NCBI RefSeq assembly: GCF_006345805.1
Contig: NC_043020.1
Coordinates: 8,494,001 to 8,558,000 of the forward strand
Reading direction: 5' to 3'
Source of the DNA: Octopus sinensis
Taxonomy: Eukaryota
DNA: 64,000 nucleotides
In this document: piece after piece, positions 9,646-63,110 of the stretch
Position numbering within the stretch: the stretch's first letter is position 1
Layout: every line of letters begins with the position of its first letter
Made by a program: the position numbers and the translations under genes
Notes under the pieces: generated by a model
The model's database searches: none
Told to the model about the DNA's origin: nothing
What the model saw: the letters and a program-made list of their open reading frames with translations, nothing else

Positions 9646-9742
9646 AATGAGATGAAATGTATTGCTGGTGCAGCAGCAACTAAATACTTGCAATGTATGT
9701 GTGCATCTGCTTATTATTGTTTCTCTTTGTGCATATCTTCAG

Positions 9743-9814
9743 GTGCTGTTCGCGTCGATACTGATCAAGATACACCAACTCTTCATCGATCTCTCAACTC
9801 ACGTGACACTGAAG
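9743..9814 (+). other. Candidate 72-nt internal exon of the ELK-like gene
   Basis: Polypyrimidine tract plus ttcag|G acceptor and gaag|gtcagt donor. No ATG. The phase 1-1 frame is open (AVRVDTDQDTPTLHRSLNSRDTE) and in phase with 33322 and 39129. Confidence 0.35.
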
Positions 9815-23660: not shown

Positions 23661-24153
23661 ATGTGGTATGGTATGTTCCTTGTTTAAAAACAATATGAAG
23701 TTGAAAGTACTCAATACATGGCGATAGTGTATATATTTATTTTAAACGATGACAATCACATCTCTTGTATTAGCCATTGTTACTTCCTGTTGAGAGTGAA
23801 TGTGGCGCGTAGGAAGAAAGAGATTTTGTATTTCTTTTTATAGTTCTATAAGTTTTGGTTCTAATTTTATCGTGTGGCCTCATTTCAGTGAGAGTCGAAC
23901 GCAGCGCGTGGAGAGTCACACACGTGACATGTGAAAGCGAAATCGTACTTAATTTCTGCTGTTCAACCACCATTTCTGAAATTTTAAAAATGACGCTTCC
24001 ACATTGATTGTGTGTATATAATCTAAACTGTCCGTCGAACGGGAACGTGAAACTCTGAGTAGCAGTAATTTTTGTGTAATTATTGTAGCTTTAAAAATTA
24101 TAAAGTGTATCGTTGGCGATTTTCTTTCTCCGTCTTCCTTTCCTTTTTCTGTG

Positions 24154-24186
24154 TTTCTGACGAAGAGCTCCGCTCGAAACGTTAAA
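24154..24186 (+). ncRNA. Minimal type-I hammerhead ribozyme motif, intact core
   Basis: ttt-CTGACGA-a-gagc(tcc)gctc-GAAAC-GTT-aaa. Stem III is the palindrome AACGTT. Same family as 63-100. Confidence 0.65.
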
Positions 24187-24217
24187 ATCCTCCTTCTTTC
24201 TTTGTTCACGTTTGGAT

Positions 24218-24274
<57 letters not shown>

Positions 24275-24920
24275 GTTCTTTACAGTGTTGTTAGCCTGGT
24301 GTATTAACAGAGAGCTTATAAAGTATTTTGCTCGGATTGATAATCCTTCACCAACACGTTTACTACAGAAGTAGGTTGTGATTTGAGGGATATTTGTCAG
24401 TTATGTCCATCAGGTAGTCGAACCACGTAAAGGTTCGTGGTTGCTCGTAAGGGCTCGTCTGAAGTCAGCTCTCAATAGACCAGGGATCTTGGTTTACAAT
24501 TATGTTTTCTTTTGACACATTCTACCAGTATACGAAGTTTCAAATTGTTTAGTTAACTAGGAAAATCTGGCCTTCAAACTGAAAAGATCCTAGACCATTC
24601 AGAACTATTGGGTTGGTGCATAATTATTGCGGCTTTTTTTTTTTTTTTCAAACAAATTTTATTCATCAAAAACAAACATCTTTAAATGATTATTCCGGTC
24701 AAACCGTCATTTAACGATGCTTTTGTTAAATATTGTTTTTGTTGAATAAATTTGTTGGAAAAAAAAAAAAAAGCCGCAGTAATTATGCACCAACCCAATA
24801 TTATTCCATGAACACTCGGGTATTTTTTTCCCTAACATTTGAGATTTGGCACAAAAAAGCTTCTGCTCTGCTCTGCTCTGCTCTGCTCTGCTCTGCTCTG
24901 CTCTGCTCTGCTCTGCTCTG

Positions 24921-26339: not shown

Positions 26340-26785
26340 CCAGGCAGTGTCAGCTTAGGGCTGTGGGCAAGTACACACTTGGTCCATTGTTAGGGCCAAG
26401 CGAGAGTAGCAGGTAGTGGTGGTGGTGGTGGCGGTGGCGTGTTCATTACCGGGAGCTGGGGGGGGGAGGATAGGTGCAGTGAAGGGGGGGTGATTAGTAG
26501 CTGATAAATTCCAACAACAACCACAACAACAACAAGACCAATGTTTCGTTGTCTGGATGTCGTCACGCCCACATTTAATAGATAGGGAGGAGATAGACGA
26601 ACCCCACACATACGGACACCTTGGGCCGGCGTTATAGACACACAGACAGACAGATAAGATAGGACAGAGAGTGCGTGTTTAAAAAAAAAAAAAAACTAGA
26701 CATTCTGTGCATACTCCCACTTACGTTTGTGTGTGTATATATATAAACATTACTTTATACATACATGCAAACAGACACATATAGA

Positions 26786-26787
<2 letters not shown>
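24275..26787 (+). repeat. Tandem duplication of a ~1.2-1.3-kb unit (24275-25533 and 25596-26787)
   Basis: Near-identical sequence offset by 1321 bp. Breakpoints lie in (TA)n tracts. The copies differ mainly in microsatellite length. Confidence 0.95.
24608..24798. mobile_element. Mariner-derived MITE (191 bp), duplicated at 25929-26119
   Basis: TA TSD and TIR ttgggttggtgcataatta(t/c)tgcggc. Confidence 0.9.
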
Positions 26788-26831
<44 letters not shown>

Positions 26832-26861
26832 TCTATATGTGTCTGTTTGCATGTATGTATA
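26756..26861. repeat. Perfect 106-bp palindrome centred on (TA)21
   Basis: Arm atacatacatgcaaacagacacatatagacc (26757-26787) is exactly inverted at 26830-26860. Confidence 0.95.
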
Positions 26862-26875
26862 TATATATATATATA

Positions 26876-27589
26876 GGAGTGGCTGTGTGGTAAGTAGCTT
26901 ACTAAACAATCACATGGTTCCGGGTTCAGTCCCACTGCGTGGCATCTTGGGCAAGTGTCTTCTGCTATAGCCCCCGGGTCGACCAATGCCTTGTGAGTGG
27001 ATTTGGTTGACGGAAACTGAAAGAAGCCTATATAGGTGCAGGAGTGGCTGTGTGGTAAGTAGCTTGCTAGCCAACGACATGGTTCCGGGTTCAGTCCCAC
27101 TGCGTGGCATCTTGGGCAAGTGTCTTCTGCTATAGCCCCCGGGCCGACCAATGCTTTGTGAGTGGATTTGGTAGACGGAAACTGAAAGAAGCCTATATAG
27201 GTGCAGGAGTGGCTGTGTGGTAAGTAGCTTGCTAACCAACCACATGGTTCCGGGTTCAGTCCCACTGCGTGGCATCTTGGGCAAGTTTCTTCTGCTATAG
27301 CCCCGGGCCGACCAATGCCTTGTGAGTGGATTTGGTAGACGGAAACTGAAAGAAGCCTGTCGTATATATGTATATATATGTGTGTGTGTCTGTGTTTGTC
27401 CCCCTACCATTGCTTGACAACCGATGCTGGTGTGTTTACGTCCCCGTAACTTAGCGGTTCGGCAAAAAGAGACCGATAGAATAAGTACTGGGCTTACAAA
27501 GAATAAATCACGGGTCGATTTGCTCAACTAAAGGCGGTGCTCCAGCATGGCCGCAGTCAAATGACTGAAACAAGTAAGAGAGTAAGAGT
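26876..27589 (+). mobile_element. SINE family A with triplicated 165-bp head
   Basis: ggagtggctgtgtgg at 26876, 27041 and 27206. Only the third copy continues into body and tail. Confidence 0.92.
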
Positions 27590-27736: not shown

Positions 27737-28158
27737 AAGGCGGCGAGCTGACAGAAACGTTAGCACGCCGGGCGAAATGCTTAGCGGTATTTCGTCTGCG
27801 TTACGTTGTGAGTTCAAATTCCGCTGAGGTCGACTTTGCCTTTTATCCTTTCGGGGTCGATAAATTAAGTACCAGTTACGCACTGGGGTCGATGTCATCG
27901 ACTTAATACTTATGTCTGTCCTTGTTTGTCCCCTCTGTGTTTAGCTCCTTGTGGGTAATAAAGAAATAGGTATTTCGTCTGCGTTACGTTGTGAGTTCAA
28001 ATTCCGCCGAGGTCGACTTTGCCTTTCATCCTTTCGGGGTCGATAAATTAAGTACCAGTTACGCACTGGGGTCGATGTAATCGACTTAATACTTATGTCT
28101 GTCCTTGTTTGTCTCCTCTGTGTTTTAGCCCCTTGTGGGTAATAAAGAAATAGGTATT
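27737..28158 (+). mobile_element. SINE family B plus tandem partial copy
   Basis: Head aaggcggcgagctgacagaa, B-box-like gagttcaaattcc, conserved ttgccttt(c/t)atcctttcggggtcgataaattaagtaccag domain, period 183 bp. Confidence 0.9.
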
Positions 28159-28462
28159 GATTAGGGGATGGGATAGTTTGAAATAAAAAGCGTCTTCCAT
28201 TGTTTTAAACTGGGTAGTGCAAAAAACAAATGGACAAATTCGGTCTGGTGGGAGGGGGATAATAAATTTTCATTTTTTAAATTTATTTTATATTTTATAA
28301 AAAGCTTCCTCCTATCATTTACAAAGGTGAGGGAAATCTGAAAAATCTCCCTCAACGAAGAAAATGCCACTTAGGTGAGAGTGTGCTATTTTGAAAATCT
28401 CTGAAGGCGTTCTGTTGCGAAAATTATCCGACAATGACCGGACACTCAGTTAGTCTATGTAT

Positions 28463-28504
<42 letters not shown>

Positions 28505-28679
28505 TATATATATATATATATATTTAAGTAGTTGAATGAATTATCCTAGTATGGATAATTCGGTTAACCGATACCTGGGTAGCAAATTCACGTCAGAAAA
28601 CACAGTTGAAGCTACATGCCAAGGGCAGAGACCACGTGCTTTCGTGTGGAAATTTGTGTGTGTTTTTTTTTAACTATAA

Positions 28680-29425
28680 ATAAATGAAAGAATGGAGTCG
28701 AACGACGATTGCCCACACGGAGTCCATAGTGATAATGACTCATTATCACTATGGACTCCGTGTGGGCAGTCATCTAAAAGTTTTTTGTTCGTCATGATGC
28801 TGACGATTGCCACACGGAGTCCATAGTGATAATGACTCATTATCACTATGGACTCCGTGTGGGCAGTCATCTAAAAGTTTTTATTCGTCATGATGCTGAC
28901 GATTGCCCACACGGAGTCCATAGTGATAATGACTCATTATCACTATGGACTCCGTGTGGGCAGTCATCTAAAAGTTTTTATTCGTCATGATGCTGACGAT
29001 TGCCCACACGGAGTCCATAGTGATAATGACTCATTATCACTATGGACTCCGTGTGGGCAGTCATCTAAAAGTTTTTGTTCGTCATGATGCTGACGATTGC
29101 CCACACGGAGTCCATAGTGATAATGACTCATTATCACTATGGACTCCGTGTGGGCAGTCATCTAAAAGTTTTTATTCGTCATGATGCTGACGATTGCCCA
29201 CACGGAGTCCATAGTGATAATAACTCATTATCACTATGGACTCCGTGTGGGCAGTCATCTAAAAGTTTTTGTTCGTCATGATGCTGACATAAGTTCCTTG
29301 TCTTTCCTGATGAGAAGGCGGCATAATGCACCCCTTATTCCTTCGGAATTAGGAATATGCAGTCTTCGAAACATATGTCGAGAATAAAGGAATTTTGTTA
29401 AATCGTCGTTCGACTCCATTCTTTC

Positions 29426-29431
<6 letters not shown>
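28680..29431 (+). mobile_element. TIR-bounded element: six 97-bp hairpin repeats plus a hammerhead ribozyme
   Basis: Perfect 31-bp inverted termini at 28680-28710/29401-29431. Units start at 28704, 28802, 28898, 28995, 29092 and 29189. Confidence 0.85.
29291..29395 (+). ncRNA. Type-I hammerhead ribozyme with intact catalytic core
   Basis: CTGATGA at 29307-29313. Stem II is gaaggc-g-gcata/tatgc-a-gtcttc. GAAAC at 29368-29372. Stem III is the palindrome ACATATGT. GTC at 29377-29379. Stem I is tttc/gaga plus aagttcctt/aaggaattt. Confidence 0.85.
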
Positions 29432-29469
<38 letters not shown>

Positions 29470-30508: not shown

Positions 30509-30542
<34 letters not shown>

Positions 30543-30859
30543 TATAGAGAGAGTGATATAGATAGATAGATAGATATACACATTATCGCAGCGTTGTTGT
30601 TGGTGATGGCGGCGGCGGCAGAGGGGTGTTGGTTCCGATTCGATCAATGTGACGCCTAGCAAGGCAACGCTTTTTTTTTCTTTTCTTTTTCTTTAAGTCT
30701 GATACTTATTCTATCGGGATCGTTTACCGAACCGCTAAGTTACAGGGACGTACACACACGCGCGCGCGCGCACACGTTCGGATCCGCGGATTTAATTGGT
30801 CTTTACTTAACGCTTTTCACTTGGCGTGAACAAATAGGCTCTATAATTTGTATTGAGTA

Positions 30860-33160: not shown

Positions 33161-33323
33161 GTGAAAAACTAAACTGTTCCAGTTTTCATATTTGTTTATA
33201 TTTTTCTCTTATTTTTTGTTTGTTGTGTTTTGTTTTTTTATTTCGCTTTGAGTAATTTTTATTGCATCATTTTTGTTTTCTAAATTAATTAAATTTTCTT
33301 TCTTTCTTTCTTTCTTTCTAGAA

Positions 33324-33444
33324 ATGGTTCAGTCTCCTACATCTCCCACACTCTCTGATTCCAGCCGATATTCAGACATTATGGGTGCCGAGTATCATCT
33401 CACAAAGCGACTTTGCACACAAGCAGCTCACACAAAATCCAAAG
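33324..33444 (+). CDS. Predicted upstream coding exon of the ELK-like gene (exon 33322-33444)
   Basis: Strong polypyrimidine acceptor (ctag|AA) and donor aag|gtaagc. Encodes MVQSPTSPTLSDSSRYSDIMGAEYHLTKRLCTQAAHTKSK. Phase 1 joins g|gt ATG in frame with the ETS exon. Confidence 0.55.
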
Positions 33445-33499
33445 GTAAGCCACCATTTATATTAGAAACCCCCCTCTCTCCCCCCCTCTCTCTCTCTCT

Positions 33500-34101: not shown

Positions 34102-34102
<1 letters not shown>

Positions 34103-35770
34103 TGCATTTGTCATCTTGCAGGCTTATTCATACTAAATACATTAACCCAACACATGACATTGGCCTATACCATGACGATGGTTTTATTATTTCCCACGAG
34201 CATGATGGGCACACACTATGTAGATTTAGAAAAAAACTTATCTCTACCGTTAACCAATTAGAATTTAAAATCTCAGTAGCTACTAACCTCTCTACAGTAG
34301 ACTATTTAGACGTGTCCCTAGATCTAAACACTTCCTCATATAAACTTTTTTATAAACAGAACGAGAAGCTTACATATGTAAACAGGCAGTCTTGTCACCC
34401 TCCCGCCATATTCATAAACCTAGTAGCCAACATTAGTAGAAGAGTGTCTTACCTCTCTTCTAAAGAAATTTTCGAGAGGGCAGCCCGCTACTATAATAAG
34501 GCCCTAGCCAATTGCAGGTTTAAAGATGAGTTAACATATAATCCCTCTAACACTTATCATGATATTAAGGATAGATATGGCTAAGGAAAATAATTTGATT
34601 TGCCCTTCCCTTTTCACTCAATGTAAAAACGAACATTGGTAGGATATTTTTGACTCTCCTTGACAAACATTTTCCTGTAAATCACAAATATAGAAAATTT
34701 TTCAACAGGCGATCAGGGAAATTGCCGTATAGCTGCTGCCCCACCACAGTTTCATTACACGTGGCCAACATAAAGAGCCTGAAGCTAGATGCAACTGTTG
34801 CGATCCAGGAGCCTGTCCACTCGAGAAATAGTGCATGACCAAGGCAGTTGTATATGAGACGAAAGTCACTACAACCCTAAATAATAATAATAGTAATAAT
34901 AATACACCGGGGAAAATACCTATATTAGATTATGTGAAGGGGAGTTTAAAAAACGCTATGTCAACCACATAGCCTCGTTACTACGTAAGGACAAGAGCAA
35001 GGTCACAAAGTTAGCCAGCCGCGTGAGGGCTTTGAAAAAGAATAAAACGCCATGTACGATTAAATGGAAAATAATCGAAAAACCCACATATGTGAATGGA
35101 CCAAAGAAATGTAGTCTTTGCTTGGCCGAAAGAACCCAGATTCTGTTCAGATCAAAAGTCCCCAACTTAGTATTGAACTCGAGATCTGAAATTTTCAGTA
35201 GTTGCGGACACATGCAAAAATATATTTTGAAGAACTGGACAATCCCATCCATCCCAGATTGATTTGACATTGCCCCGACCTTATTATTTAAAAGACTAAG
35301 GATGTTAGATCGCACACTACTATCGTCCCCCATCCTTTATTTTAGTATTTCTTTAGGTTTATTTTTTATACTTTATAAATTTTTACATTCCCGACATTTC
35401 TTATATCTATACCGTTACATTTCTACTTCATATTTTATACATTTGTACTCTCCTTACACAATTTACATTCAATTTCGTACATTATTTACATTTACATCAG
35501 GTCTGTTGGTTTCGTTTTCCGGTTAGAAGTTAGGATTTTCTATACGCTACCATTTTCTCACGTTTTTCGCGTATTCTCACGTCCCATGCCATATTTAAAG
35601 TTCTTAGTTCAGTACGAAGAGTGATCTGCGCCTGGAGAACGTGTCTGGATTTCCAGACACGTGAAACTATTAGTAACGCCCCGAAAATATGTATTGTGGT
35701 CCTAAAACAGGAATATTTGACTCTCGCCAGATGGAGTGTTCTCTTTGTTGAATTATAAAACGAACCAATA
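34102..35770 (+). mobile_element. Decayed Penelope-like retroelement (RT + GIY-YIG, Naiad-like) with HHR-bearing 3' region
   Basis: RT motifs GLYHDDG, VDYLDVSL and SCHPP. Cys linker RCNC..CPL..C. VVY...YIRLCEGEFKKRYVNH, CSLC and LNSRSEIFSSCGH follow. Frameshifts and stops are present. Confidence 0.85.
35627..35680 (+). ncRNA. Degenerate hammerhead ribozyme of the Penelope-like element
   Basis: CTGGAGA (A6>G), perfect 10-bp stem II acgtgtctgg/ccagacacgt, GAAAC, stem III ACTATTAGT, GTA site. Confidence 0.65.
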
Positions 35771-35864: not shown

Positions 35865-37134
35865 TTGGGTTGGCAAGAAAATAATTTCGTTTTTCGCAAA
35901 TAATTACGATTTTTTAAATGACTTTTATCAATGTTGTGATTTTTTTTCCTTTTGACATTTGATAGCCGTTACTTTTAGCTTACTTTAGAAGCAAATTGCG
36001 CATAATTTTGTTAATAGCTGTTAGTTCAGTGTCAATTTTAACATGCAGTACAAAAACGACGACTTTCGCCATATTTTGCTTTTTTACTTCCGGGGTCACA
36101 AAGAGATATGTGAAGTCTATGGTGTTGATTGCTTAACAACGCATATGTCAGAAATGGCTTTAAAAATTCCGTTCTGAGGATTTTTCACTCAAAGATGACC
36201 AACGTTCTGAGGATTTTTCACTCAAAGATGACCAACGTTCTGGTCGACCTACCGAAGTTGATAACCGAATTACAACTATAATTCAATCTGATTGCGAGAG
36301 ATTGCAGAGAGGTTAAATGTATCACACACAACAATTGAAAATCACTTAAAATGTCTTGGACTCTTAAAGAAGCTCTATATTTTGGTTCCACATCAATTGA
36401 AAGAGATTCACTTTACACCACGAATCAATATTTGCGATATGCATCTCAAACGCAATGAAATCGACCCCTTTTTTTTTTTTATCGAATCATCACTGGTGAT
36501 GAAAAATGGAGTGTCTACAATAACATCAATCAAAAACGATCATGGTCCAAGTGTAAAAACATCGAAGCTGAATTGCATAAAAAAAAAAGGTCATGCTGTC
36601 AATTTGGTGGGATTACAAAGGTGTTGTGTATTTTGAGCTGCTTCCAAGGAACCAAACGATCAATTCACATGTTTACTGTCAACAACTAATGAAACTGGAG
36701 GAAGCAATCAAAGAAAAACGACCAGAATTGACAAATCCTAAAGGAATAGCGTTCCACCATGACAACGCTAGACCACATACGTTTTTGCTAACTTGTGAAA
36801 AATTATTGGAGCTTGGTTGGGAAGTGATGTCACGTCCACCATATAGCCCATACCTTGCACCATCAGATTACCATCTATTTCGAAGTTTGCAAAATTCCTT
36901 GAATGGTAAAACTTTCAATAATGATGAAAACCTGAAATTAAACGTCCTTCAGTTTTTGGCTGATAAGGACCAGAAGCTCTACGAGCACTAAACCAGGAAG
37001 TTGCCAGAAAGATGGCAAAAGCTCGCCGAACAAAATGGAAAATATATATAATTGATAAAGTTCATTCTTTGTATGGAAAAAAAATGACTTTTATTTCATA
37101 CTAAAAAACCGAAATTACTTTCTTGCCAACCTAA
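35865..37134 (+). mobile_element. Full-length (1270 bp) decayed mariner, DD34D, mellifera-like
   Basis: TIR tt(g/a)ggttggcaagaaa(a/g)taatttcg with TA on the right. N-terminus MQYKNDDFRHILLFYFR from 36043. HDNARPH to YSPYLAPSD spacing is exactly 34 residues. Frameshifts and a 33-bp in-frame duplication at 36171-36236. Confidence 0.95.
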
Positions 37135-37140
37135 TACATA

Positions 37141-37317
37141 TTAGGAAGTTAAAGGTTATGACCATTCATAGAGTGACCATTGGTTCCGCACTTTGCAGTA
37201 TAGTGACTCGTCAGACTTAAATGGCCGAAGTCTGATGAGTTGCCTACACTGCTAAGCACTTTATGGGAGCGAAACCAATGGTCACTCTATGACCGGCCAT
37301 AACTTTTAACTTCCTAA
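37141..37317. ncRNA. 177-bp fold-back with hammerhead cores on both strands
   Basis: 45-bp arms with 4 mismatches. Plus strand: CTGATGA 37232-37238, GAAAC 37271-37275, caatg, GTC. Minus strand: CTGACGA...GGAAC-caatg-GTC. Confidence 0.8.
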
Positions 37318-38816: not shown

Positions 38817-39130
38817 CTTACAATAAATCACTCGGTCCGTAGCTTAGAAATACTGGGTTGACGTCCAGCGGGAACAGCTTTGTTTCATGGAGGAGGAAAG
38901 ATCTTCTTTAGTACTTGGTTGTACAATGCTTTCCAATGTGTGTGGTAGTGGCGCGCGCACACATTAGCCATTTGAAAAGACTATGAAAGTCTCGACCACG
39001 GTCGAACAATGATGATGATGATGATGACGTTCTTATTCGTTTTCTATGTCTTTTTTTAGTATTTGTTGTTTCACTTTTTTTTTTATTTTTGTCCTGACTC
39101 ATTTGCTGTTTTCCTGTTTTTCCTACAGGT

Positions 39131-40300
39131 ATGGAATCCAACATCACACTTTGGCAGTTCCTTCTGGAACTTCTCCTCAGCCACCAGCATCGCAACATTA
39201 TCCAGTGGACCAACAACGACGGTGAATTCAAGCTGGTGAACGCCGAGGAAGTTGCCAAACTCTGGGGCTTGCGCAAAAACAAGAACAACATGAACTATGA
39301 CAAGCTCAGCCGGGCCCTTCGCTATTACTACGACAAGAACATCATCAAAAAGGTCATGGGCCAAAAATTCGTCTACAAATTCGTTTCGTTCCCCGAAATT
39401 GAAAAAATCGAAAGTAAAATTCCGTTCAAAGTGAAAATGGAAAGCCTAGCCATGGAGTATGGCCAACGGGTCTATCCGCATTTCGTTGCACCCACCAATC
39501 TAGAGAACAGAGCTGCTGCAAGTGTTTGGCATCATCCTTCTAATTCTGCTGCTGTCGCCGCTGCTTCGATGGGGAGCGAACACAGATCTGGGATAAAGCT
39601 AGAGTCACACGAAAGGGATTCCAGCAAGTCTCAGTATTCAGAAAAGAAAGTCGATTTTCCGTCGCCATTGTCGTTATCATCAACGTCATCACTTTCGTCA
39701 TATTCATCGTCTCCGACGTCGTCGACGTCATCGCCCCTGCTGACACCTACGTCATCGTTGTCATCACCGTCGTCGTCGTCTTCTTCGCCGATGTCATCGT
39801 CATCGCCTTCTTCTTTGTCCACGTCGTTATCTTTGTCGTCGTCATCGTCGGCGGCGGAGGAACGGCGTGAAGCGGCACATCGCAAGCAGAGCCACAGCCC
39901 GTCGTCCTCGTCCTCGGTGTTGACCCCGGCACGACCCAAACCCATCCCGCTCAACCTGCACGTCGACGCGCCGTCCTCTTCTGCTCTGTCCCCGGGGACG
40001 TCACTTCCGATCCCGAGTCCCACGCTCAAAGTGTCATCATCCTATTCCAACATCCACACGCCCATCTTTCTGGCGTCTCCCCTCCTTAGTCATCGGACAC
40101 CCTTCCTACATTTCTGGAGCTCGCTGAGCCCCTTGACGACGTTGAGCCCTCGCTACAATTCCGCAAGCGCCTTCCAGTTTCCTAGCTATGCCGGTCCACA
40201 CATGCCATTGACCGTGGGGCTGACCAGTTACAATAACATGGACGGTCTCTCCTCCCCCGTACTCGTCTCCTCTCCCACCAGAACTATCCCAGTGTTATAA
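39131..40300 (+). CDS. ELK: ETS-domain transcription factor, ELK1/ELK3/ELK4 (TCF) subfamily; main coding exon
   Basis: N-terminal ETS domain [11 protein letters not shown]...[33 protein letters not shown]-site-like [20 protein letters not shown] and FQFP match TCF C-termini. Acceptor cctacag|gtATG at 39128/39129. Confidence 0.97.
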
Positions 40301-48071: not shown

Positions 48072-48625
48072 GCGGTATTTCGTCTGCCGTTACGTTCTGA
48101 GTTCAAATTCCGCCGAGGTCGACTTTACCTTTCATCCTTTCGGGGTCGATAAATTAAGTACCAGTTACGCACTGGGGTCGATGTAATCGACTTAATCCAT
48201 TTGCCTGCCCTTCTTTGTCCTCTCTGTTTAGCCCCTTGTGGGTAGTAAAGAAATAGGTATTTCGTCTGCCGCTACGTTCTGAGTTCAAATTCCGCCGAGG
48301 TCGACTTTACCTTTCATCCTTTCGGGGTCGATAAATTAAGTACCAGTTACGCACTGGGGTCGATGTAATCGACTTAATACCTATGTCTGTCCTTGTTTGT
48401 CCTCTCTGTTTAGCCCCTTGTGGGTAGTAAAGAAATAGGTATTTCGTCTGCCGCTACGTTCTGAGTTCAAATTCCGCCGAGGTCAACTTTGCCTTTCATC
48501 CTTTCGGGGTCGATAAATTAAGTACCAGTTACGCACTGGGGGCGATGTAATCGACTTAATACCTATGTCTGTCCTTGTTTGTCCCCTCTACGTTTAGCCC
48601 CTTGTGGGTAATAAAGAAATAGGTA
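48072..48625 (+). mobile_element. Tandem trimer of headless SINE family B units (182-184 bp)
   Basis: ggtatttcgtctgcc at 48074, 48256 and 48438. Confidence 0.92.
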
Positions 48626-54083: not shown

Positions 54084-54183
54084 NNNNNNNNNNNNNNNNN
54101 NNNNNNNNNNNNNNNNNNNNNNNNNNNNNNNNNNNNNNNNNNNNNNNNNNNNNNNNNNNNNNNNNNNNNNNNNNNNNNNNNNN
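54084..54183. other. Assembly gap (100 N)
   Basis: Run of N. Confidence 1.
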
Positions 54184-57539: not shown

Positions 57540-57695
57540 CTCTTTTACTCGTTTCAGTCATTTGACTGCGGCGATGCTGGAGCACCGCTTTTAATCGAGC
57601 CAATCGACCCCGGGACTTATTCTTTTGTAAGCCCAGTACTTATTCTATCGGTCTATTTTGCCGAACTGCTAAGTGACGGGGAAACAATGTGCCAT

Positions 57696-57805
57696 GCTTA
57701 CAGCGCCTAGGTTTCCCAAGCAGTCACCCATCTAAGTACTAACTAGGCTCGACGTTGCTTAACTTCGTTGATCAGACGAGAACCGGTGCTTTCAACGTGA
57801 TATGG
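57696..57805 (-). pseudogene. 5S rRNA pseudogene (lacks ~8 nt at the 5' end)
   Basis: The minus strand reads ccatatcacgttgaaagcaccggttctcgtctgatcaacgaagttaagcaacgtcgagcctagttagtacttagatgggtgactgcttgggaaacctaggcgctgtaagc. This is co-linear with metazoan 5S rRNA and is a single dispersed copy. Confidence 0.92.
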
Positions 57806-59403
57806 AGGCGCAGGAATGGCTGTATGGTAAGTACCTTGCTTACCAACCACATGCTTCCGGGTTCAGTTCCGCTGCTAAGCATTTCGTCCAGCGTGCTACC
57901 AATTCTGCCAGCTCGCCACCTTCTTTTCGCACATAATAATAAAGAAGTATATTTTGTCTTTTCCTTGGCTCAGTGACTGTACTGCGGCCAAGCTGGAGCA
58001 CTGCCTTATAAGGTTTTAGTCGAACAAATCGATTCCAGTACTTCTTTATAAGTCTGGTACTAATTCTATCGTTTTCTTTTTCCGGAGAGTAAAGTTAGGA
58101 GGTTGGGACATAAACAACCCAATACCGGTTGTCGAGTAGGGAGGCATGCAGAAACACTCAGACACACGCATACGTATATATATATATATTCATTTTTAGG
58201 AACGATGAATCTCGAAGCAGATAAAGCTATAAATAACAGCGTGTAAATATATATATTGAGTTAAAAAAGCCTTTGGATAGGAAAAGTCGAATGTAGGTGG
58301 TATGTTTGCGATGGGCTTCCACACAGTTTCCGTCTGTCAAATTCACTCACAGGCATTGGTTAACCCGGGGTTATAACAAAAAACTCTTGCCCGAGTGGCA
58401 CGCAGTGGGACTGAACCTAAAACCACGTAGTTGCTAAGCGAGCTCCTTACCCACACAGCCATTGAACCATGAAAGCGTTAGCATTGGACTTTGGGAGTCC
58501 CACAAAGATTTCTTTCCAAAGAATTTTCCCGAATAAAAGAAGGTGGAAAGGAACAGGTGGAAATTTTGTCGGTGAACAGGTCGCGGTTTGAAAGCGACGA
58601 AAATATTTTGACACAAATTAAATTTAAATGTTGAGGTGAATCTAACAGTTTTTGTGTGTTCCTAAATGGCTTAGAAACACCTTCCACGCTGTAACTTTTT
58701 AAGAAAGTTATAGAGAAACGATTCGTGGCGGCGAAAAGATGGATGCTGGGGACACTCTTGTCGTTATGGCAACGTCCCTTGGCGGTGCCTTGGTAGAGTC
58801 GATAAAGATGTCAGAAAGAATGCTTCGTGCTAATCGTTCCGACACACTACGCTCAGAACGAATTTGAACTCAGAACGTAGCGGCAGACGAAACACCGCTA
58901 AGCATTTAGCCCAGTAAGCGTAAGCTAAAGTTTCTGCTAGCTCGCCGCCTTAAGGAAAGGTTATACCTTCAAAGGCGTTTGCAAGTGACGGCTAAGGCTT
59001 CTTTAGAGCTAAAAATTACATTATTCAATAAAATATTCCTTTTCCTTAAGCTATAGTGTGTAAAAGTTTGAGGAGTTTTGGTGATTATTTCAATAAAACA
59101 TAATCGAGTCGCTCTATTTTCAAAGCTGGAACCAATCGTACAAAAATATTGTTTGTGATTTGATTAGCATAAACTAATTTTCTAAATTTTCACTAAATTG
59201 TTTCATCCTCGCTATATTTTTTTTTGTCCCTCTGTCTTGCTCATCGTTTTTCAAACTGTGGGTCCCGACCCTTCAATCGGCCGCGACAAAAAAAAAAAAA
59301 GAAGAAAGGAATGCAAGTGGGAGCAAAGTGCAGAATATAACCCAGCGTTTTTCAAATTGTGGGTCCCGACAAAAAAGTTTGGAAAACGCTGATGTAGCTA
59401 ATG

Positions 59404-60388: not shown

Positions 60389-61030
60389 GTTAGCACACCA
60401 GGCAAAATGCTTAGCAGCGTTTCGCCCATCTTAATGTTCTGAGTTCAAATTCTGCCAAGGTAGACTTTGCCTTTCATCCTTTCAGGGTCGATAAATGAAG
60501 TACCAGTGAAACACTGGGGTTAACGTGATCAAATAGTCTCCACCCCCAAAATTTCAGGCCTTGTGCCTTTAGTAGAAAGGATCATCATTATTAAGGTGGT
60601 GAGCTGACAGAATGGTCAGCGTGCCAGACAAAATGCTTAGTGGCATTTCATCCATCTTTACGTTCGGAGTTCAAATTCTGGCAGGGTCAACTTTGCCTTT
60701 CATCCGTTCGGGGTTGATGAAAATGGTACCATTTGAGTGCGAGCTGGCAGAAGCGTTAGCACGCCAAGCAAAATGCTTTGCGGTATTTCGTCTGCCGTTA
60801 CGTTGTGAGTTCAAATTCCGCCGAGGTCGACTTTGCCTTTCATCCTTTCGGGGTCGATAAATTAAGCACCAGTTACGCACTGGGGTCGATGTAATCGACT
60901 TAATACCTATGTCTGTCTTTGTTTGTCCCCTCTATGTTTAGCCCCTTGTGGGTAATAAAGAAATAGGTACCAGTTGAGTGCTGGGATCGATTTAATAAAC
61001 TATCCCCTCCCACCAAATTCCAGACCTTGT
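60389..61030 (+). mobile_element. Head-to-tail chain of family B SINE variants
   Basis: Successive B heads and bodies with two tail types (aaatttcaggccttgtgcc and gccccttgtgggtaataaagaaataggta). Confidence 0.85.
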
Positions 61031-62602: not shown

Positions 62603-63110
62603 ATTGACTAGTCTCCTCCCTCAAAATTTCAGGCCCTGTGCCTTTAGTAGAAAAGATTATCATTATTAAGGTGGTGAGCTGGCAGAATGGTTAGCACACC
62701 AGAAAAAAACACTTAGTGGCATTTGAGCCATCTTTACATTCTGAGTTCAAATTCTGCCAAGGTCGACTTTGCTTTTCATCCGTTTGGGGTTGATGAAATA
62801 AGTACCAGTTACATACTAGGGTTGATATAATCGACCAGCCCCCTCCCCCACAATTTCAGGCCTTGTGCCTACTATGATAAAAAGGATTATTATTATCATC
62901 ATTATTAAGGGTTAGCACACCAAACAAAACGCTTAGTGGCATTTGAGCCATCTTTACATTCTGAGTTCAAATTCTGGCAGGGTCATCTTTACTTTTCATC
63001 CATTTGGGCTTGATGAAAATAGTACCAGTTACATACTGGGGTTGATATAACCGACTATCCTCTCCCGCCAAATTCCAGGCCTTGTGCCTACAGAAGAAAA
63101 GATTATCATC
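62603..63110 (+). mobile_element. Head-to-tail chain of family B SINE variants
   Basis: Tail-(att)n-aaggtggtgagctggcagaat junctions. Confidence 0.85.

What the first reader, a model, noticed from the sequence alone, without database searches (positions are those of the whole stretch)
28680..29431. TIR-bounded element with six giant hairpins and an intact hammerhead ribozyme
Seen: perfect 31-bp terminal inverted repeats enclose six 96-98 bp units. Each unit is a palindrome with ~29-bp arms and a 1-nt centre (arms perfect in four units, single changes in units 2 and 6). Directly after is a complete type-I HHR with every core base, the G10.1-C11.1 pair, long stem II, palindromic stem III ACATATGT, a GUC site and bipartite stem I. 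There is no ORF. Established: HHRs mark Penelope-like elements and retrozymes, but retrozymes carry an HHR in each repeat. Inference: a non-autonomous ribozyme retroelement built by repeated fold-back and template switching, with an architecture I do not recognise.
Basis: partly seen in the sequence, partly recalled or inferred. Interest (0 to 1): 0.9.

Follow-up and report, generated by a model that had tools for sequence, protein, structure and literature searches.

The report
Hairpin-rich hammerhead retroelement in octopus
A 752-bp insertion in an intron of an Octopus sinensis ETS transcription-factor gene carries six near-perfect hairpin repeats and one intact-looking self-cleaving hammerhead ribozyme. 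It is most likely an unusual non-coding passenger of Penelope-like retrotransposons, not a wholly new kind of element.

Summary
There are perfect 31-bp inverted termini (28680-28710 / 29401-29431) and six tandem 96-98-bp units, each a 29-bp-arm palindrome. A complete type I hammerhead (HHR, 29291-29395) would cut after C29379.

A strict HHR descriptor hits only this site in the window and none of 300 shuffles. Rfam Hammerhead_1 aligns end to end but below threshold (19.9 vs 34 bits), because stem II is 54 nt long.

The window is Octopus sinensis. The element lies, sense strand, in a 23.5-kb intron of an ELK3-like gene.

The "unrecognised" architecture largely matches published Penelope-like element (PLE) insertion signatures:
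- an HHR near the 3' end with a 2-bp helix III and a palindromic tetraloop (dimer type);
- an inverted 5'-truncated copy, or 30-40-bp "tail", that creates inverted termini;
- a 3' end abutting (TA)n.

The same locus holds another short min-HHR family (7 copies, 6 ending on (TA)n) and a PLE remnant with a relic HHR.

No second copy, empty site or parental PLE could be found, so a Tc1/mariner-type MITE remains a live rival. The palindromic hairpin array and the very long stem II are the unusual parts.

Verdict: a probable new variant of a known kind, of moderate interest.

The parts
28680..28710 (.). Left inverted terminus (31 bp). It is the reverse complement of the element's 3' end, and I interpret it as an inverted, extremely 5'-truncated copy or 'tail'.
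   Evidence: perfect 31/31 complementarity with 29401-29431; unique in the window.
28704..28710 (+). GACGATT, a 7-nt overlap shared by the inner end of the left terminus and the start of every 97-bp unit (junction microhomology).
   Evidence: Read: each unit starts with GACGATTGCC, and the left terminus ends with ...GAACGACGATT.
28704..29288 (+). Tandem array of six units (98, 96, 97, 97, 97 and 97+3 bp). Each unit is a roughly 59-71-nt palindrome plus a roughly 34-nt spacer.
   Evidence: period 97, 6.0 copies, 98% matches; unit boundaries and differences.
28710..28768 (+). Unit 1 palindrome: perfect 29-bp arms, centre C at 28739.
28810..28862 (+). Unit 2 palindrome: perfect for 26 bp per arm, centre 28836. 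A 1-nt deletion (CCC to CC) in the left arm breaks the outer part.
28904..28962 (+). Unit 3 palindrome: perfect 29-bp arms, centre 28933.
29001..29059 (+). Unit 4 palindrome: perfect 29-bp arms, centre 29030.
29098..29156 (+). Unit 5 palindrome: perfect 29-bp arms, centre 29127.
29195..29253 (+). Unit 6 palindrome: 29-bp arms with one mismatch (G to A) at the second position from the centre, 29224.
29291..29395 (+). Type I hammerhead ribozyme motif. Stem I is 29291-29306 paired with 29380-29395. The CUGAUGA core is 29307-29313. Stem II is 29314-29367 (54 nt). GAA is 29368-29370. Helix III ACAUAUGU is 29371-29378. The predicted cut is after C29379.
   Evidence: sequence; fold; descriptor: 1 hit in the window, 0 in 300 shuffles; Rfam RF00163, 19.9 bits, E = 0.01, full model length.
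29380..29431 (+). 52-nt 3' region downstream of the cleavage site, comprising the stem I 3' strand and the terminal 31 nt.
   Evidence: Read.
29401..29431 (.). Right inverted terminus (31 bp), which is the 3' end of the element.
29429..29467 (.). (TA)19.5 microsatellite that directly abuts the element's 3' end and overlaps it by 3 nt. This is the presumed target or 3' flank.
   Evidence: One search gives the background: about one perfect (TA)>=8 tract per kb in the window.

Best explanation
This is a non-coding, non-autonomous retroelement of the hammerhead / Penelope-like element (PLE) world. It is either a retrozyme-like monomer or a pLTR-derived passenger, and a PLE reverse transcriptase/GIY-YIG endonuclease copied it into a (TA)n tract of an ELK3-like intron in Octopus sinensis.

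**Proposed sequence of events**
1. An RNA was made consisting of at least 6 hairpin units, one type I HHR and a 52-nt 3' region.
2. The PLE enzyme nicked the target at a TA-rich site and primed cDNA synthesis from the 3' end of that RNA.
3. The PLE enzyme cuts and extends both DNA strands, so the other strand also primed on the RNA's 3' end. That made a short inverted copy of 24-31 nt.
4. The two cDNAs were joined at the 7-nt microhomology GACGATT. This produced the perfect 31-bp 'TIRs', whose outer ends are both the element's 3' terminus.

**How the ribozyme would behave**
- Helix III has only 2 bp and a palindromic AUAU loop. As a single copy the ribozyme should therefore be weak.
- It should cut well, after C29379, only when two copies pair through ACAUAUGU, as described for newt, schistosome and PLE hammerheads.
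- This single intronic copy is therefore probably tolerated. It would be transcribed passively on the sense strand of the host pre-mRNA as a very stable multi-hairpin RNA.

**Shown**: the sequence anatomy; the significance of the HHR motif; the species, intron and strand; and the co-occurrence of other HHR elements and a PLE relic at the same locus.

**Inferred**: retrotransposition by a PLE enzyme; the origin of the inverted termini; the dimer requirement; and transcription. How the palindromic units arose, and their amplification to six copies by slippage or template switching, is also inferred.
For: **HHR is real and of the invertebrate/PLE type**
- All core positions are present, as are the G10.1-C11.1 and A15.1-U16.1 pairs and C17.
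- The descriptor gives 1 hit in the window and 0 in 300 shuffles.
- Rfam Hammerhead_1 is the only family matched, over its full length.
- A helix III of 2 bp plus a palindromic tetraloop is what PMC4209133, PMC7229834 and PMC3088659 describe for metazoan type I HHRs that act as dimers.

**PLE insertion signatures from the literature**
- A 30-40-bp tail at either end.
- HHRs within pLTRs, drawn near the 3' ends.
- A (TA)n insertion bias, stated there for the Naiad clade, which lacks canonical HHRs. All four points are from PMC8557442.
- The purified PLE protein cleaves and extends both strands (PMC11167929).

**What is seen here**
- The inverted copy is 31 bp long and its outer ends are the 3' terminus.
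- The HHR lies 52 nt from the 3' end.
- The 3' end abuts (TA)19.5.
- The junction shows the microhomology GACGATT.

**Same-genome precedent**
- A roughly 200-bp family with a PLE-type min-HHR has 7 copies in 119 kb of O. sinensis. Six of the 7 end directly on (TA)n at their 3' side only.
- An independent min-HHR insertion occupies the orthologous microsatellite in O. bimaculoides.
- A degenerate RT/GIY-YIG (PLE-type) remnant with a relic HHR lies 5 kb downstream.

**Other support**
- Dispersed single-HHR 'monomers' related to PLE pLTRs are documented.
- No target-site duplication of 3 bp or more exists at any trimming of the ends.
- The whole RNA is extremely self-paired (-467 kcal/mol, z = -36), as is reported for retrozyme RNAs.
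Against: - Only one copy is known. None turned up elsewhere in the 64-kb window, in 119 kb of O. sinensis or in 97 kb of O. bimaculoides.
- No clean empty site exists, because the surrounding 3.7 kb does not align with O. bimaculoides.
- No autonomous PLE with a matching HHR and tail was found. There is no similarity to the PLE remnant in the window, or to L038 or L039.
- None of the 7 copies of the other min-HHR family shows an inverted tail copy.
- Perfect TIRs flanked by TA are also exactly what a Tc1/mariner-type MITE looks like, and such MITEs also favour TA-rich targets.
- The six palindromic units have no published counterpart in PLEs or retrozymes that I could find.
- The Rfam score is below the gathering threshold.
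- Self-cleavage is untested.
Confidence: 0.55

Rival explanations
1. A class II, Tc1/mariner-type MITE. It would have 28-bp terminal inverted repeats flanked by a TA target-site duplication, and an interior holding a tandem array of palindromic units. The interior would also hold a hammerhead that was captured from a PLE or retrozyme, or inherited from an ancestral sequence. A transposase acting in trans would move it by cut and paste, and the ribozyme would play no part in mobility.
For: - The inverted termini are a perfect 31 bp.
- If the ends are trimmed by 3 nt, the element is flanked by TA/TA with 28-bp TIRs.
- Insertion at a TA-rich site fits this class.
- Mariner remnants and a mariner-like MITE with 49-bp TIRs lie in the same window.
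- From my own knowledge, tandem-repeat-bearing MITE-like elements are known in molluscs.
- There is no poly(A) tail.
Against: - The TA 'duplication' is trivial, because AT/TA is part of the palindromic end itself.
- The termini (TA|AATGAAAG...) resemble neither the mariner-type TTAGG... end seen in the window nor, from my own knowledge, the usual Tc1/mariner termini.
- The long (TA)n tract lies only on the HHR-proximal side, as it does for the min-HHR retroelement family at this locus.
- An oriented, intact type I HHR 52 nt from one end is a PLE/retrozyme hallmark.
- The one full-text search combining hammerhead ribozyme, MITE and terminal inverted repeats returned 2 papers, and neither title or abstract concerns such an element.
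- No second copy and no autonomous partner was found.
Confidence: 0.25
2. A retrozyme multimer in decay. On this reading all seven roughly 97-101-nt periods were once hammerhead units of a tandem non-LTR retrozyme. Six of them were converted into perfect palindromes by fold-back copying, which destroyed their cores. Only the last unit keeps a working HHR.
For: - The distance between successive GUC sites is 97 nt in the array and 101 nt across the HHR unit.
- Each unit starts with CUGACGA, which fits the CUGANGA core pattern, and has UAAA where the HHR has GAAA (read).
- The unit's ATAATG-to-TAAA stretch (mainly its right arm) aligns with the matching stretch of HHR stem II plus the GAAA region. 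The match is 30 of 49 positions, p about 0.02-0.04 under two scoring schemes.
Against: - The similarity is marginal and vanishes under a third scoring scheme (p = 0.47).
- CUGACGA could be coincidence, at about 5% per unit counting both strands.
- In the units that heptamer is buried in the hairpin stem.
- Without gaps, the HHR unit is no more similar to a repeat unit than chance allows (family D1, last copy 61% over two units).
- This model does not by itself explain the inverted termini.
Confidence: 0.1
3. Not a mobile element at all. This would be a locus-specific palindromic minisatellite that grew next to an old, solitary PLE/retrozyme tail. The 31-bp inverted match would come from a local inverted duplication. 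Alternatively, the hairpins could be a host-selected hairpin-RNA, small-RNA or RNA-editing substrate cluster within the ELK3-like intron.
For: - Only one copy is known.
- The units are 98% identical, as expected of a young local expansion.
- The region is lineage-specific relative to O. bimaculoides.
- Generic miRNA-hairpin models score well above chance on the units (mir-28 49 bits, MIR2646 76 bits).
Against: - All the miRNA matches are far below their gathering scores (64 and 245 bits) and simply reflect long perfect hairpins.
- A perfect 31-bp inverted copy of exactly the terminal sequence, ending exactly at the element's boundaries, is hard to get from a random local duplication.
- Perfect hairpins with a 1-nt centre are not miRNA-like.
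Confidence: 0.08

Closest known systems
Penelope-like element (PLE) insertions and their pseudo-LTR hammerheads (Cervera & de la Pena 2014, PMC4209133; Craig et al. 2021, PMC8557442; Frangieh et al. 2024, PMC11167929)
   Same: - A type I HHR near the 3' end with a minimal, palindromic helix III.
- Inverted repeats created by an inverted 5'-truncated copy.
- A terminal segment of 31 bp, within the 30-40-bp range given for the PLE 'tail'.
- A (TA)n microsatellite at the insertion site.
- No clear target-site duplication.
- Stem II longer than usual (7-8 bp reported for PLE min-HHRs).
   Different: - No RT/GIY-YIG ORF and no recognisable pLTR.
- The body is six palindromic 97-bp units, which has no described PLE counterpart.
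- Stem II is 54 nt, far longer than reported.
- The HHR has a canonical helix I/III layout and is not the 'min-HHR' form.
- No sequence match to any PLE was available here.
Animal non-LTR retrozymes (Cervera & de la Pena 2020, PMC7229834; Li, Clavereau & Pollet 2026 preprint, 10.64898/2026.07.22.740005)
   Same: - Non-coding and AT-rich.
- A type I HHR whose helix III is 2 bp plus a tetraloop, as in invertebrate retrozymes.
- A highly self-paired RNA.
- The total length of 752 bp falls within the reported range of 51-972 bp.
- Dispersed monomers exist and are related to PLE pLTRs.
   Different: - Retrozymes are tandem repeats with an HHR in every unit, and they are bounded by direct repeats, not inverted ones.
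- Here there is one HHR, inverted termini and an internal array of non-ribozyme hairpins.
- Circular RNA cannot form from a single cleavage site.
Dimer-dependent satellite hammerheads (newt satellite 2, Schistosoma Sm-alpha), as summarised in PMC4209133, PMC7229834 and PMC3088659
   Same: A weak helix III with a palindromic loop, so two ribozymes can pair into an extended helix III. The topology is type I.
   Different: Those elements sit in roughly 330-bp tandem or SINE-like repeats with a short stem II (about 4 bp) and conserved loop 1-loop 2 contacts. Here stem II is a 54-nt interrupted rod, so the canonical loop-loop contact cannot form in the same way.
Tandem-repeat-containing MITE-like elements of molluscs and Tc1/mariner (Stowaway-like) MITEs. 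This comparison rests on my own knowledge; I checked no paper for it here.
   Same: Short, non-coding, with perfect terminal inverted repeats, TA-compatible flanks and an internal tandem array.
   Different: None is known to carry a hammerhead. The termini here do not look like Tc1/mariner ends, and the (TA)n tract lies on one side only.
Intronic hammerheads of amniotes (cited in PMC7229834 as playing a role in mRNA biogenesis)
   Same: A type I HHR on the sense strand of a host-gene intron, so it would be transcribed within the pre-mRNA.
   Different: Those are conserved single motifs under selection. This one is a young, lineage-specific insertion with no evidence of host function.

Membership tests
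Hammerhead ribozyme, type I (Rfam RF00163) | Conserved core: C3 U4 G5 A6 N7 G8 A9 and G12 A13 A14. | tested here: met
   CUGAUGA at 29307-29313 and GAA at 29368-29370. Every core column matches in the Rfam alignment.
Hammerhead ribozyme, type I (Rfam RF00163) | A15.1-U16.1 pair, H17 at the cleavage site, and a G10.1-C11.1 pair closing stem II. | tested here: met
   A29371-U29378, C29379 and G29314-C29367. The descriptor requires all of them.
Hammerhead ribozyme, type I (Rfam RF00163) | Three helices around the core, with helix I open (type I topology). | tested here: met
   The MFE fold forms stem I (4 + 9 bp) and stem II. Helix III is 2 bp plus a tetraloop. The descriptor gives 1 hit in the window and 0 in 300 shuffles.
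Hammerhead ribozyme, type I (Rfam RF00163) | Score at or above Rfam's gathering threshold. | tested here: not met
   19.9 bits against 34, E = 0.01 in a 131-nt search. It was not reported in the larger searches. The shortfall coincides with a 50-nt insertion in stem II.
Hammerhead ribozyme, type I (Rfam RF00163) | Site-specific self-cleavage (after C17). | not testable with these tools
   This needs in vitro transcription and a cleavage assay.
PLE-derived or PLE-mobilised element | An HHR of the metazoan PLE/retrozyme type: short helix III with a palindromic loop, capable of acting as a dimer. | tested here: met
   ACAUAUGU at 29371-29378, compared with the descriptions in PMC4209133 and PMC7229834.
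PLE-derived or PLE-mobilised element | An inverted 5'-truncated copy and/or a 30-40-bp tail at the ends of the insertion. | tested here: met
   A 31-bp perfect inverted copy of the 3' terminus sits at the 5' end. The criterion comes from PMC8557442. This feature is consistent with a PLE but not exclusive to it.
PLE-derived or PLE-mobilised element | Insertion bias for microsatellites, (TA)n. | tested here: met
   The 3' end abuts (TA)19.5. Six of the 7 copies of another min-HHR family at this locus do the same. The background is about 1 tract per kb. In PMC8557442 the (TA)n bias is stated for the Naiad clade.
PLE-derived or PLE-mobilised element | Sequence homology of the HHR and 3' region to the pLTR of an autonomous PLE in the same genome. 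| tested here: inconclusive
   There is no similarity to the PLE remnant at 34102-35700, to the rest of L036 or L037, or to the PLE contigs L038 and L039. The whole octopus genome could not be searched.
PLE-derived or PLE-mobilised element | Multiple dispersed copies with variable 5' truncation. | not testable with these tools
   No other copy was found in 216 kb of octopus DNA. No eukaryotic genome collection was available. Scans of the metagenome, prokaryote and viral collections gave only chance 18-mers or nothing.
Animal non-LTR retrozyme | Tandem repeats, each carrying a type I HHR, able to yield unit-length circular RNA. | tested here: not met
   There is only one HHR. The six units lack a functional core and resemble the HHR unit only weakly.
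Class II MITE (Tc1/mariner-like) | Terminal inverted repeats. | tested here: met
   A perfect 31 bp.
Class II MITE (Tc1/mariner-like) | A target-site duplication of defined length. | tested here: inconclusive
   Only 2-bp AT/TA matches are possible, and they are part of the palindromic end. No duplication of 3-10 bp appears at any trimming. No empty site is available.
Class II MITE (Tc1/mariner-like) | Termini shared with an autonomous transposon or with other family members. | tested here: not met
   The TIR occurs nowhere else in the window, L036 or L037. It does not resemble the mariner-like MITE ends at 37141-37317. The sample is small.
miRNA or hairpin-RNA precursor families (Rfam) | Score at or above the family gathering threshold. 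| tested here: not met
   mir-28 scores 49.1 against 64, MIR2646 76.1 against 245 and MIR851 36.5 against 90. These are generic long-hairpin matches.

The most novel reading that the evidence does not exclude
The element would represent an undescribed type of PLE-dependent ribozyme passenger. On this reading its body is an array of former hammerhead units that fold-back copying turned into perfect 29-35-bp hairpins, leaving a single functional, dimer-dependent HHR with a 54-nt stem II.

Sitting sense-strand in an ETS transcription-factor intron, it would deliver a self-cleaving site to the pre-mRNA. It would also deliver six Dicer/ADAR-grade double-stranded RNA hairpins. That would link retrozyme biology to small-RNA production or RNA editing in cephalopods.
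Probability: 0.1. Interest if true: 0.75.

Novelty: new variant of a known kind. Interest (0 to 1): 0.45.

Why it matters
**If the leading reading is right**
- This would extend hammerhead-bearing PLE passengers to cephalopods. My two literature searches that paired octopus or mollusc with hammerhead or retrozyme terms turned up no description of HHR elements in cephalopods.
- It would be a clean natural example of how two-strand priming by a PLE enzyme creates perfect 'TIRs' on a retroelement. Such termini can mislead transposon classifiers into calling a MITE.

**Open questions it raises**
- The HHR combines a fully canonical core with a 54-nt stem II and a dimer-type helix III. That makes it a useful test of how far stem II can grow before activity is lost.
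- The six perfect hairpins are an unusual cargo. Their origin and fate (Dicer, ADAR, genome instability) are unknown.

**If it is a MITE instead**
- I found no description of a DNA transposon that carries a hammerhead; only one literature search addressed this.

**Limits**
- Either way this is one young, probably neutral insertion in one intron.
- The general biology of PLE- and retrozyme-associated hammerheads is already established.

Tried and rejected
**Searches for other copies**
- Translated spurious ORF against the protein collection: no candidates.
- Exact look-up of the adjacent ORF: nothing.
- An 18-mer from the terminus scanned against the metagenome, prokaryote-genome and viral collections gave 15, 16 and 4 hits. 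The prokaryote-genome count fits my rough chance estimate of about 17 for an 18-mer, and I take the other two as chance as well.
  - BLAST of the element against those loci extends at most to 22-23 nt.
- 26-mers from the palindrome and from the HHR: no hit in viral contigs.

**Empty-site test**
- I fetched the O. bimaculoides orthologous locus (L037). The flanking blocks are collinear, but the 3.7 kb around the element does not align, so no empty site can be called.
- O. vulgaris DNA was not retrievable: the gene range exceeds 100 kb, and the other isoforms are not on record.

**Parental PLE**
- The RT/GIY-YIG-like remnant at 34102-35262 led to relatives P0129 and P0131 and their contigs L038 and L039.
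- Those contigs carry HHR-like motifs upstream of the ORF but share no similarity with this element.
- Pfam did not recognise these proteins. I therefore call them PLE-type only from motifs read by eye (YRDDG; VVYR...YVGLT; CPLC) and from a weak precomputed HTH_animal hit.

**Other ideas set aside**
- Homology between the palindrome arm and the terminal 31-mer: not significant (p = 0.16-0.41).
- RNAcofold of two HHR copies gave only a domain-swapped duplex. It says nothing about the helix III dimer.
- The second CTGATGA...GAAA site, at 37232, lies inside a mariner-like MITE and fails the strict HHR descriptor.
- The miRNA readings of the hairpins are all far below their gathering scores.
Full report
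**1. What is in the sequence**

The finding is accurate. The 31 bases at 28680-28710 are the exact reverse complement of 29401-29431. The core 26-mer occurs only at these two sites in the window, where shuffles predict none.

Between the termini, Tandem Repeats Finder reports 6.0 copies of a 97-bp unit at 28704-29288 with 98% matches. My dissection of the units gives the following.
- Unit lengths are 98, 96, 97, 97, 97 and 97 (+3) bp.
- Units 1, 3, 4 and 5 contain a palindrome with perfect 29-bp arms and a single central C. The arms extend to 35 bp with two mismatches.
- Unit 2 has a 1-nt deletion in its left arm.
- Unit 6 has one G to A change next to the centre.

The inner 7 nt of the left terminus (GACGATT, 28704-28710) are also the first 7 nt of every unit. 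The array ends in almost the same phase (…GCTGAC at 29288).

Only short spurious ORFs of up to 68 aa cross the element.

**2. The hammerhead**

Reading against the standard numbering gives this layout.
- Stem I 5' strand: 29291-29306.
- C3-A9 (CUGAUGA): 29307-29313.
- Stem II: 29314-29367, with G10.1-C11.1 closing a 54-nt interrupted rod.
- G12 A13 A14: 29368-29370.
- Helix III ACAUAUGU: 29371-29378, that is A15.1-U16.1 and C-G around the loop AUAU.
- C17: 29379.
- Stem I 3' strand: 29380-29395, forming 4 bp, a 3x3 internal loop and then 9 bp.

The MFE fold recovers stems I and II.

A strict type I descriptor requires the core, G10.1-C11.1, at least 4 bp in each of stems I and II, at least 2 bp in helix III, and H17. 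It finds this site alone on both strands of the 64-kb window and nothing in 300 dinucleotide-preserving shuffles.

Rfam gave no hammerhead hit in the 64-kb or 1.6-kb searches. When only 29280-29410 was searched, Hammerhead_1 (RF00163) was the single family returned. It aligned over model positions 1-45 of 45 with every core column matched. The score was 19.9 bits against a gathering score of 34, E = 0.01, with 50 nt inserted where the model expects 10.

The motif is therefore a real type I hammerhead by anatomy. It sits below Rfam's threshold because of its stem II, and its activity is untested.

**3. Where it is**

- The ETS-domain ORF at 39131-40300 (Pfam Ets) led to ELK3-like proteins of Octopus sinensis.
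- The O. sinensis locus L036 (GCA_006345805.1, CM016882.1) contains the element and its flanks at 100% identity. The window is therefore O. sinensis.
- tblastn places exons of the ELK3-like gene at 9730-9813, 33321-33446 and 39128-40297, all on the + strand.
- The element therefore lies in a roughly 23.5-kb intron, with the hammerhead on the sense strand.
- In the O. bimaculoides orthologous locus (L037) the flanking blocks are collinear: window 26502-26866 with L037 82027-82389, and window 30542-30758 with L037 84509-84716.
- The 3.7 kb between those blocks does not align with the 2.1 kb in O. bimaculoides, and the element is absent from L037.
- The region is therefore lineage-specific, but no clean empty site is available.
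- O. vulgaris DNA could not be fetched.

**4. What the surroundings show**

The same stretch of octopus DNA is full of hammerhead-bearing retroelement debris.

(a) A roughly 200-bp family.
- It has 7 copies in the 119 kb of L036, 75-88% identical, one of them in the window at about 24105-24221.
- It has none in L037.
- It carries a PLE-type minimal hammerhead: GUUU-CUGACGA-A-GAGC/UCC/GCUC-GAAA-CGU-U-AAAC. This shows an unpaired base before stem II and a palindromic ACGU helix III, as Cervera & de la Pena 2014 describe.
- Six of the 7 copies end directly on a (TA)n tract at their 3' side, whereas their 5' flanks vary.

(b) At the microsatellite where O. sinensis has one of these copies, O. bimaculoides has a different minimal hammerhead with the U3-A8 core covariation. 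It too is followed by (TA)n.

(c) At 34102-35262 (+) there is a degenerate ORF set.
- Its database relatives (P0129, P0131) have a YRDDG reverse-transcriptase motif. They also have a C-terminal GIY-YIG-like segment with a CPLC motif.
- Pfam did not recognise them, so the PLE assignment rests on motifs read by eye.
- About 360 nt downstream sits a relic hammerhead. Its core is intact in O. bimaculoides (CUGAAGA…GAAA) and mutated in O. sinensis (CUGGAGA).

Perfect (TA)>=8 tracts occur about once per kb in the window. An element end that abuts one exactly is therefore improbable by chance, roughly 0.1-0.5% per end.

**5. Interpretation**

- They have a 30-40-bp tail at either end and hammerheads within their pLTRs, drawn near the 3' ends. 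Their Naiad clade prefers (TA)n, which obscures target-site duplications (PMC8557442).
- Purified PLE protein cleaves and extends both DNA strands, unlike R2 or L1 (PMC11167929).
- Metazoan type I hammerheads typically have a 1-2-bp helix III capped by a small palindromic loop and work as dimers (PMC4209133; PMC7229834; PMC3088659).
- Dispersed single-HHR monomers related to PLE pLTRs are common (10.64898/2026.07.22.740005).

The element matches each point.
- The HHR lies 52 nt from the 3' end.
- Helix III is 2 bp plus AUAU.
- The 3' end sits on (TA)19.5.
- No duplication of 3 bp or more exists at any trimming of the ends.
- The 31-bp inverted copy has the 3' terminus as its outer end, and it joins the body at a 7-nt microhomology.

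I therefore read the 'TIRs' as the footprint of two-strand priming by a PLE enzyme on a non-coding RNA. They are probably not transposase binding sites. My confidence in this is 0.55.

**6. What remains unexplained or unproven**

- Only one copy is known.
- No parental PLE with this HHR and tail was found.
- None of the 7 copies of the other family shows an inverted tail.
- Perfect TIRs flanked by TA also fit a Tc1/mariner-type MITE. I keep that reading at 0.25. The termini do not resemble the mariner-like MITE in the window, and the one search that combined the terms found no paper describing a MITE with a hammerhead.
- The six palindromic units have no described counterpart in PLEs or retrozymes.
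- A weak hint exists that the units derive from hammerhead units:
  - the period is 97 nt against 101 nt between GUC sites;
  - each unit starts with CUGACGA;
  - the unit's ATAATG-to-TAAA stretch aligns with the matching stretch of stem II plus GAAA, 30 of 49 positions (p about 0.02-0.04 in two schemes, 0.47 in a third).

  I treat this as a hypothesis only.
- The whole element would fold into an extraordinarily stable RNA (-467 kcal/mol, z = -36). This matches the 'highly self-paired' character reported for retrozyme RNAs.
- The matches to miRNA families are generic and far below threshold.

**7. Verdict**

The claim of an unrecognisable architecture does not hold, because the termini, the ribozyme type and the target match PLE biology.

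I rate it a new variant of a known kind. The hairpin array and the 54-nt stem II are the original features. Interest is moderate (0.45).

Noticed in passing
window 24105-24221 (+), followed by (TA)n at 24222-24275; also L036 2874, 32027, 42882(-), 45981(-), 48400 and 64799: A roughly 200-bp short-element family carrying a PLE-type minimal hammerhead (CTGACGA at 24157-24163, GAAA at 24176-24179, palindromic ACGT helix III). It has 7 copies in 119 kb of O. sinensis and none in the orthologous 97 kb of O. bimaculoides. Six of the 7 copies end directly on (TA)n.
   Followed up: partly
L037 41180-41310 (O. bimaculoides), compared with L036 48400-48612 (O. sinensis): The orthologous microsatellite carries different hammerhead elements in the two species. 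O. bimaculoides has a U3-A8 core-covariation min-HHR (TTGATAA...GAAACATGTA). O. sinensis has a copy of the roughly 200-bp family. These look like independent insertions into the same (TA)n/(TG)n tract.
   Followed up: partly
window 34102-35262 (+) and about 35628-35680: A degenerate retroelement ORF set whose relatives have RT (YRDDG) and C-terminal GIY-YIG-like motifs, that is, PLE-type. It is shared with O. bimaculoides. A relic hammerhead about 360 nt downstream has core CTGGAGA in O. sinensis and CTGAAGA (intact motif) at L037:88298.
   Followed up: partly
window 37141-37317: A 177-bp mariner-like MITE with 49-nt inverted termini (90% complementary, starting TTAGGAAG...). It lies next to mariner transposase remnants at 36292-36991. 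It contains CTGATGA...GAAA at 37232 but fails the strict hammerhead descriptor.
   Followed up: partly
window 57695-57815 (-): A full-length 5S rRNA match (Rfam RF00001, 79.1 bits, E = 4e-15) inside a SINE-rich stretch. It could be a 5S gene, a pseudogene or a 5S-derived SINE head.
   Followed up: no
window 26875-27358, 27786-28158, 48074-48625, 60601-60858 and 62689-63091: Short tandem arrays (2-3 copies) of 140-220-bp SINE-like units. The two just upstream of the element (165-bp and 183-bp periods) have many dispersed relatives in the window.
   Followed up: no
window 28456-28523: A second (TA)34 tract lies 156 bp upstream of the element's left end. I could not decide whether the intervening 28524-28679 is original target DNA or part of a compound insertion.
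   Followed up: no
window 54084-54183: An assembly gap of 100 N.
   Followed up: no
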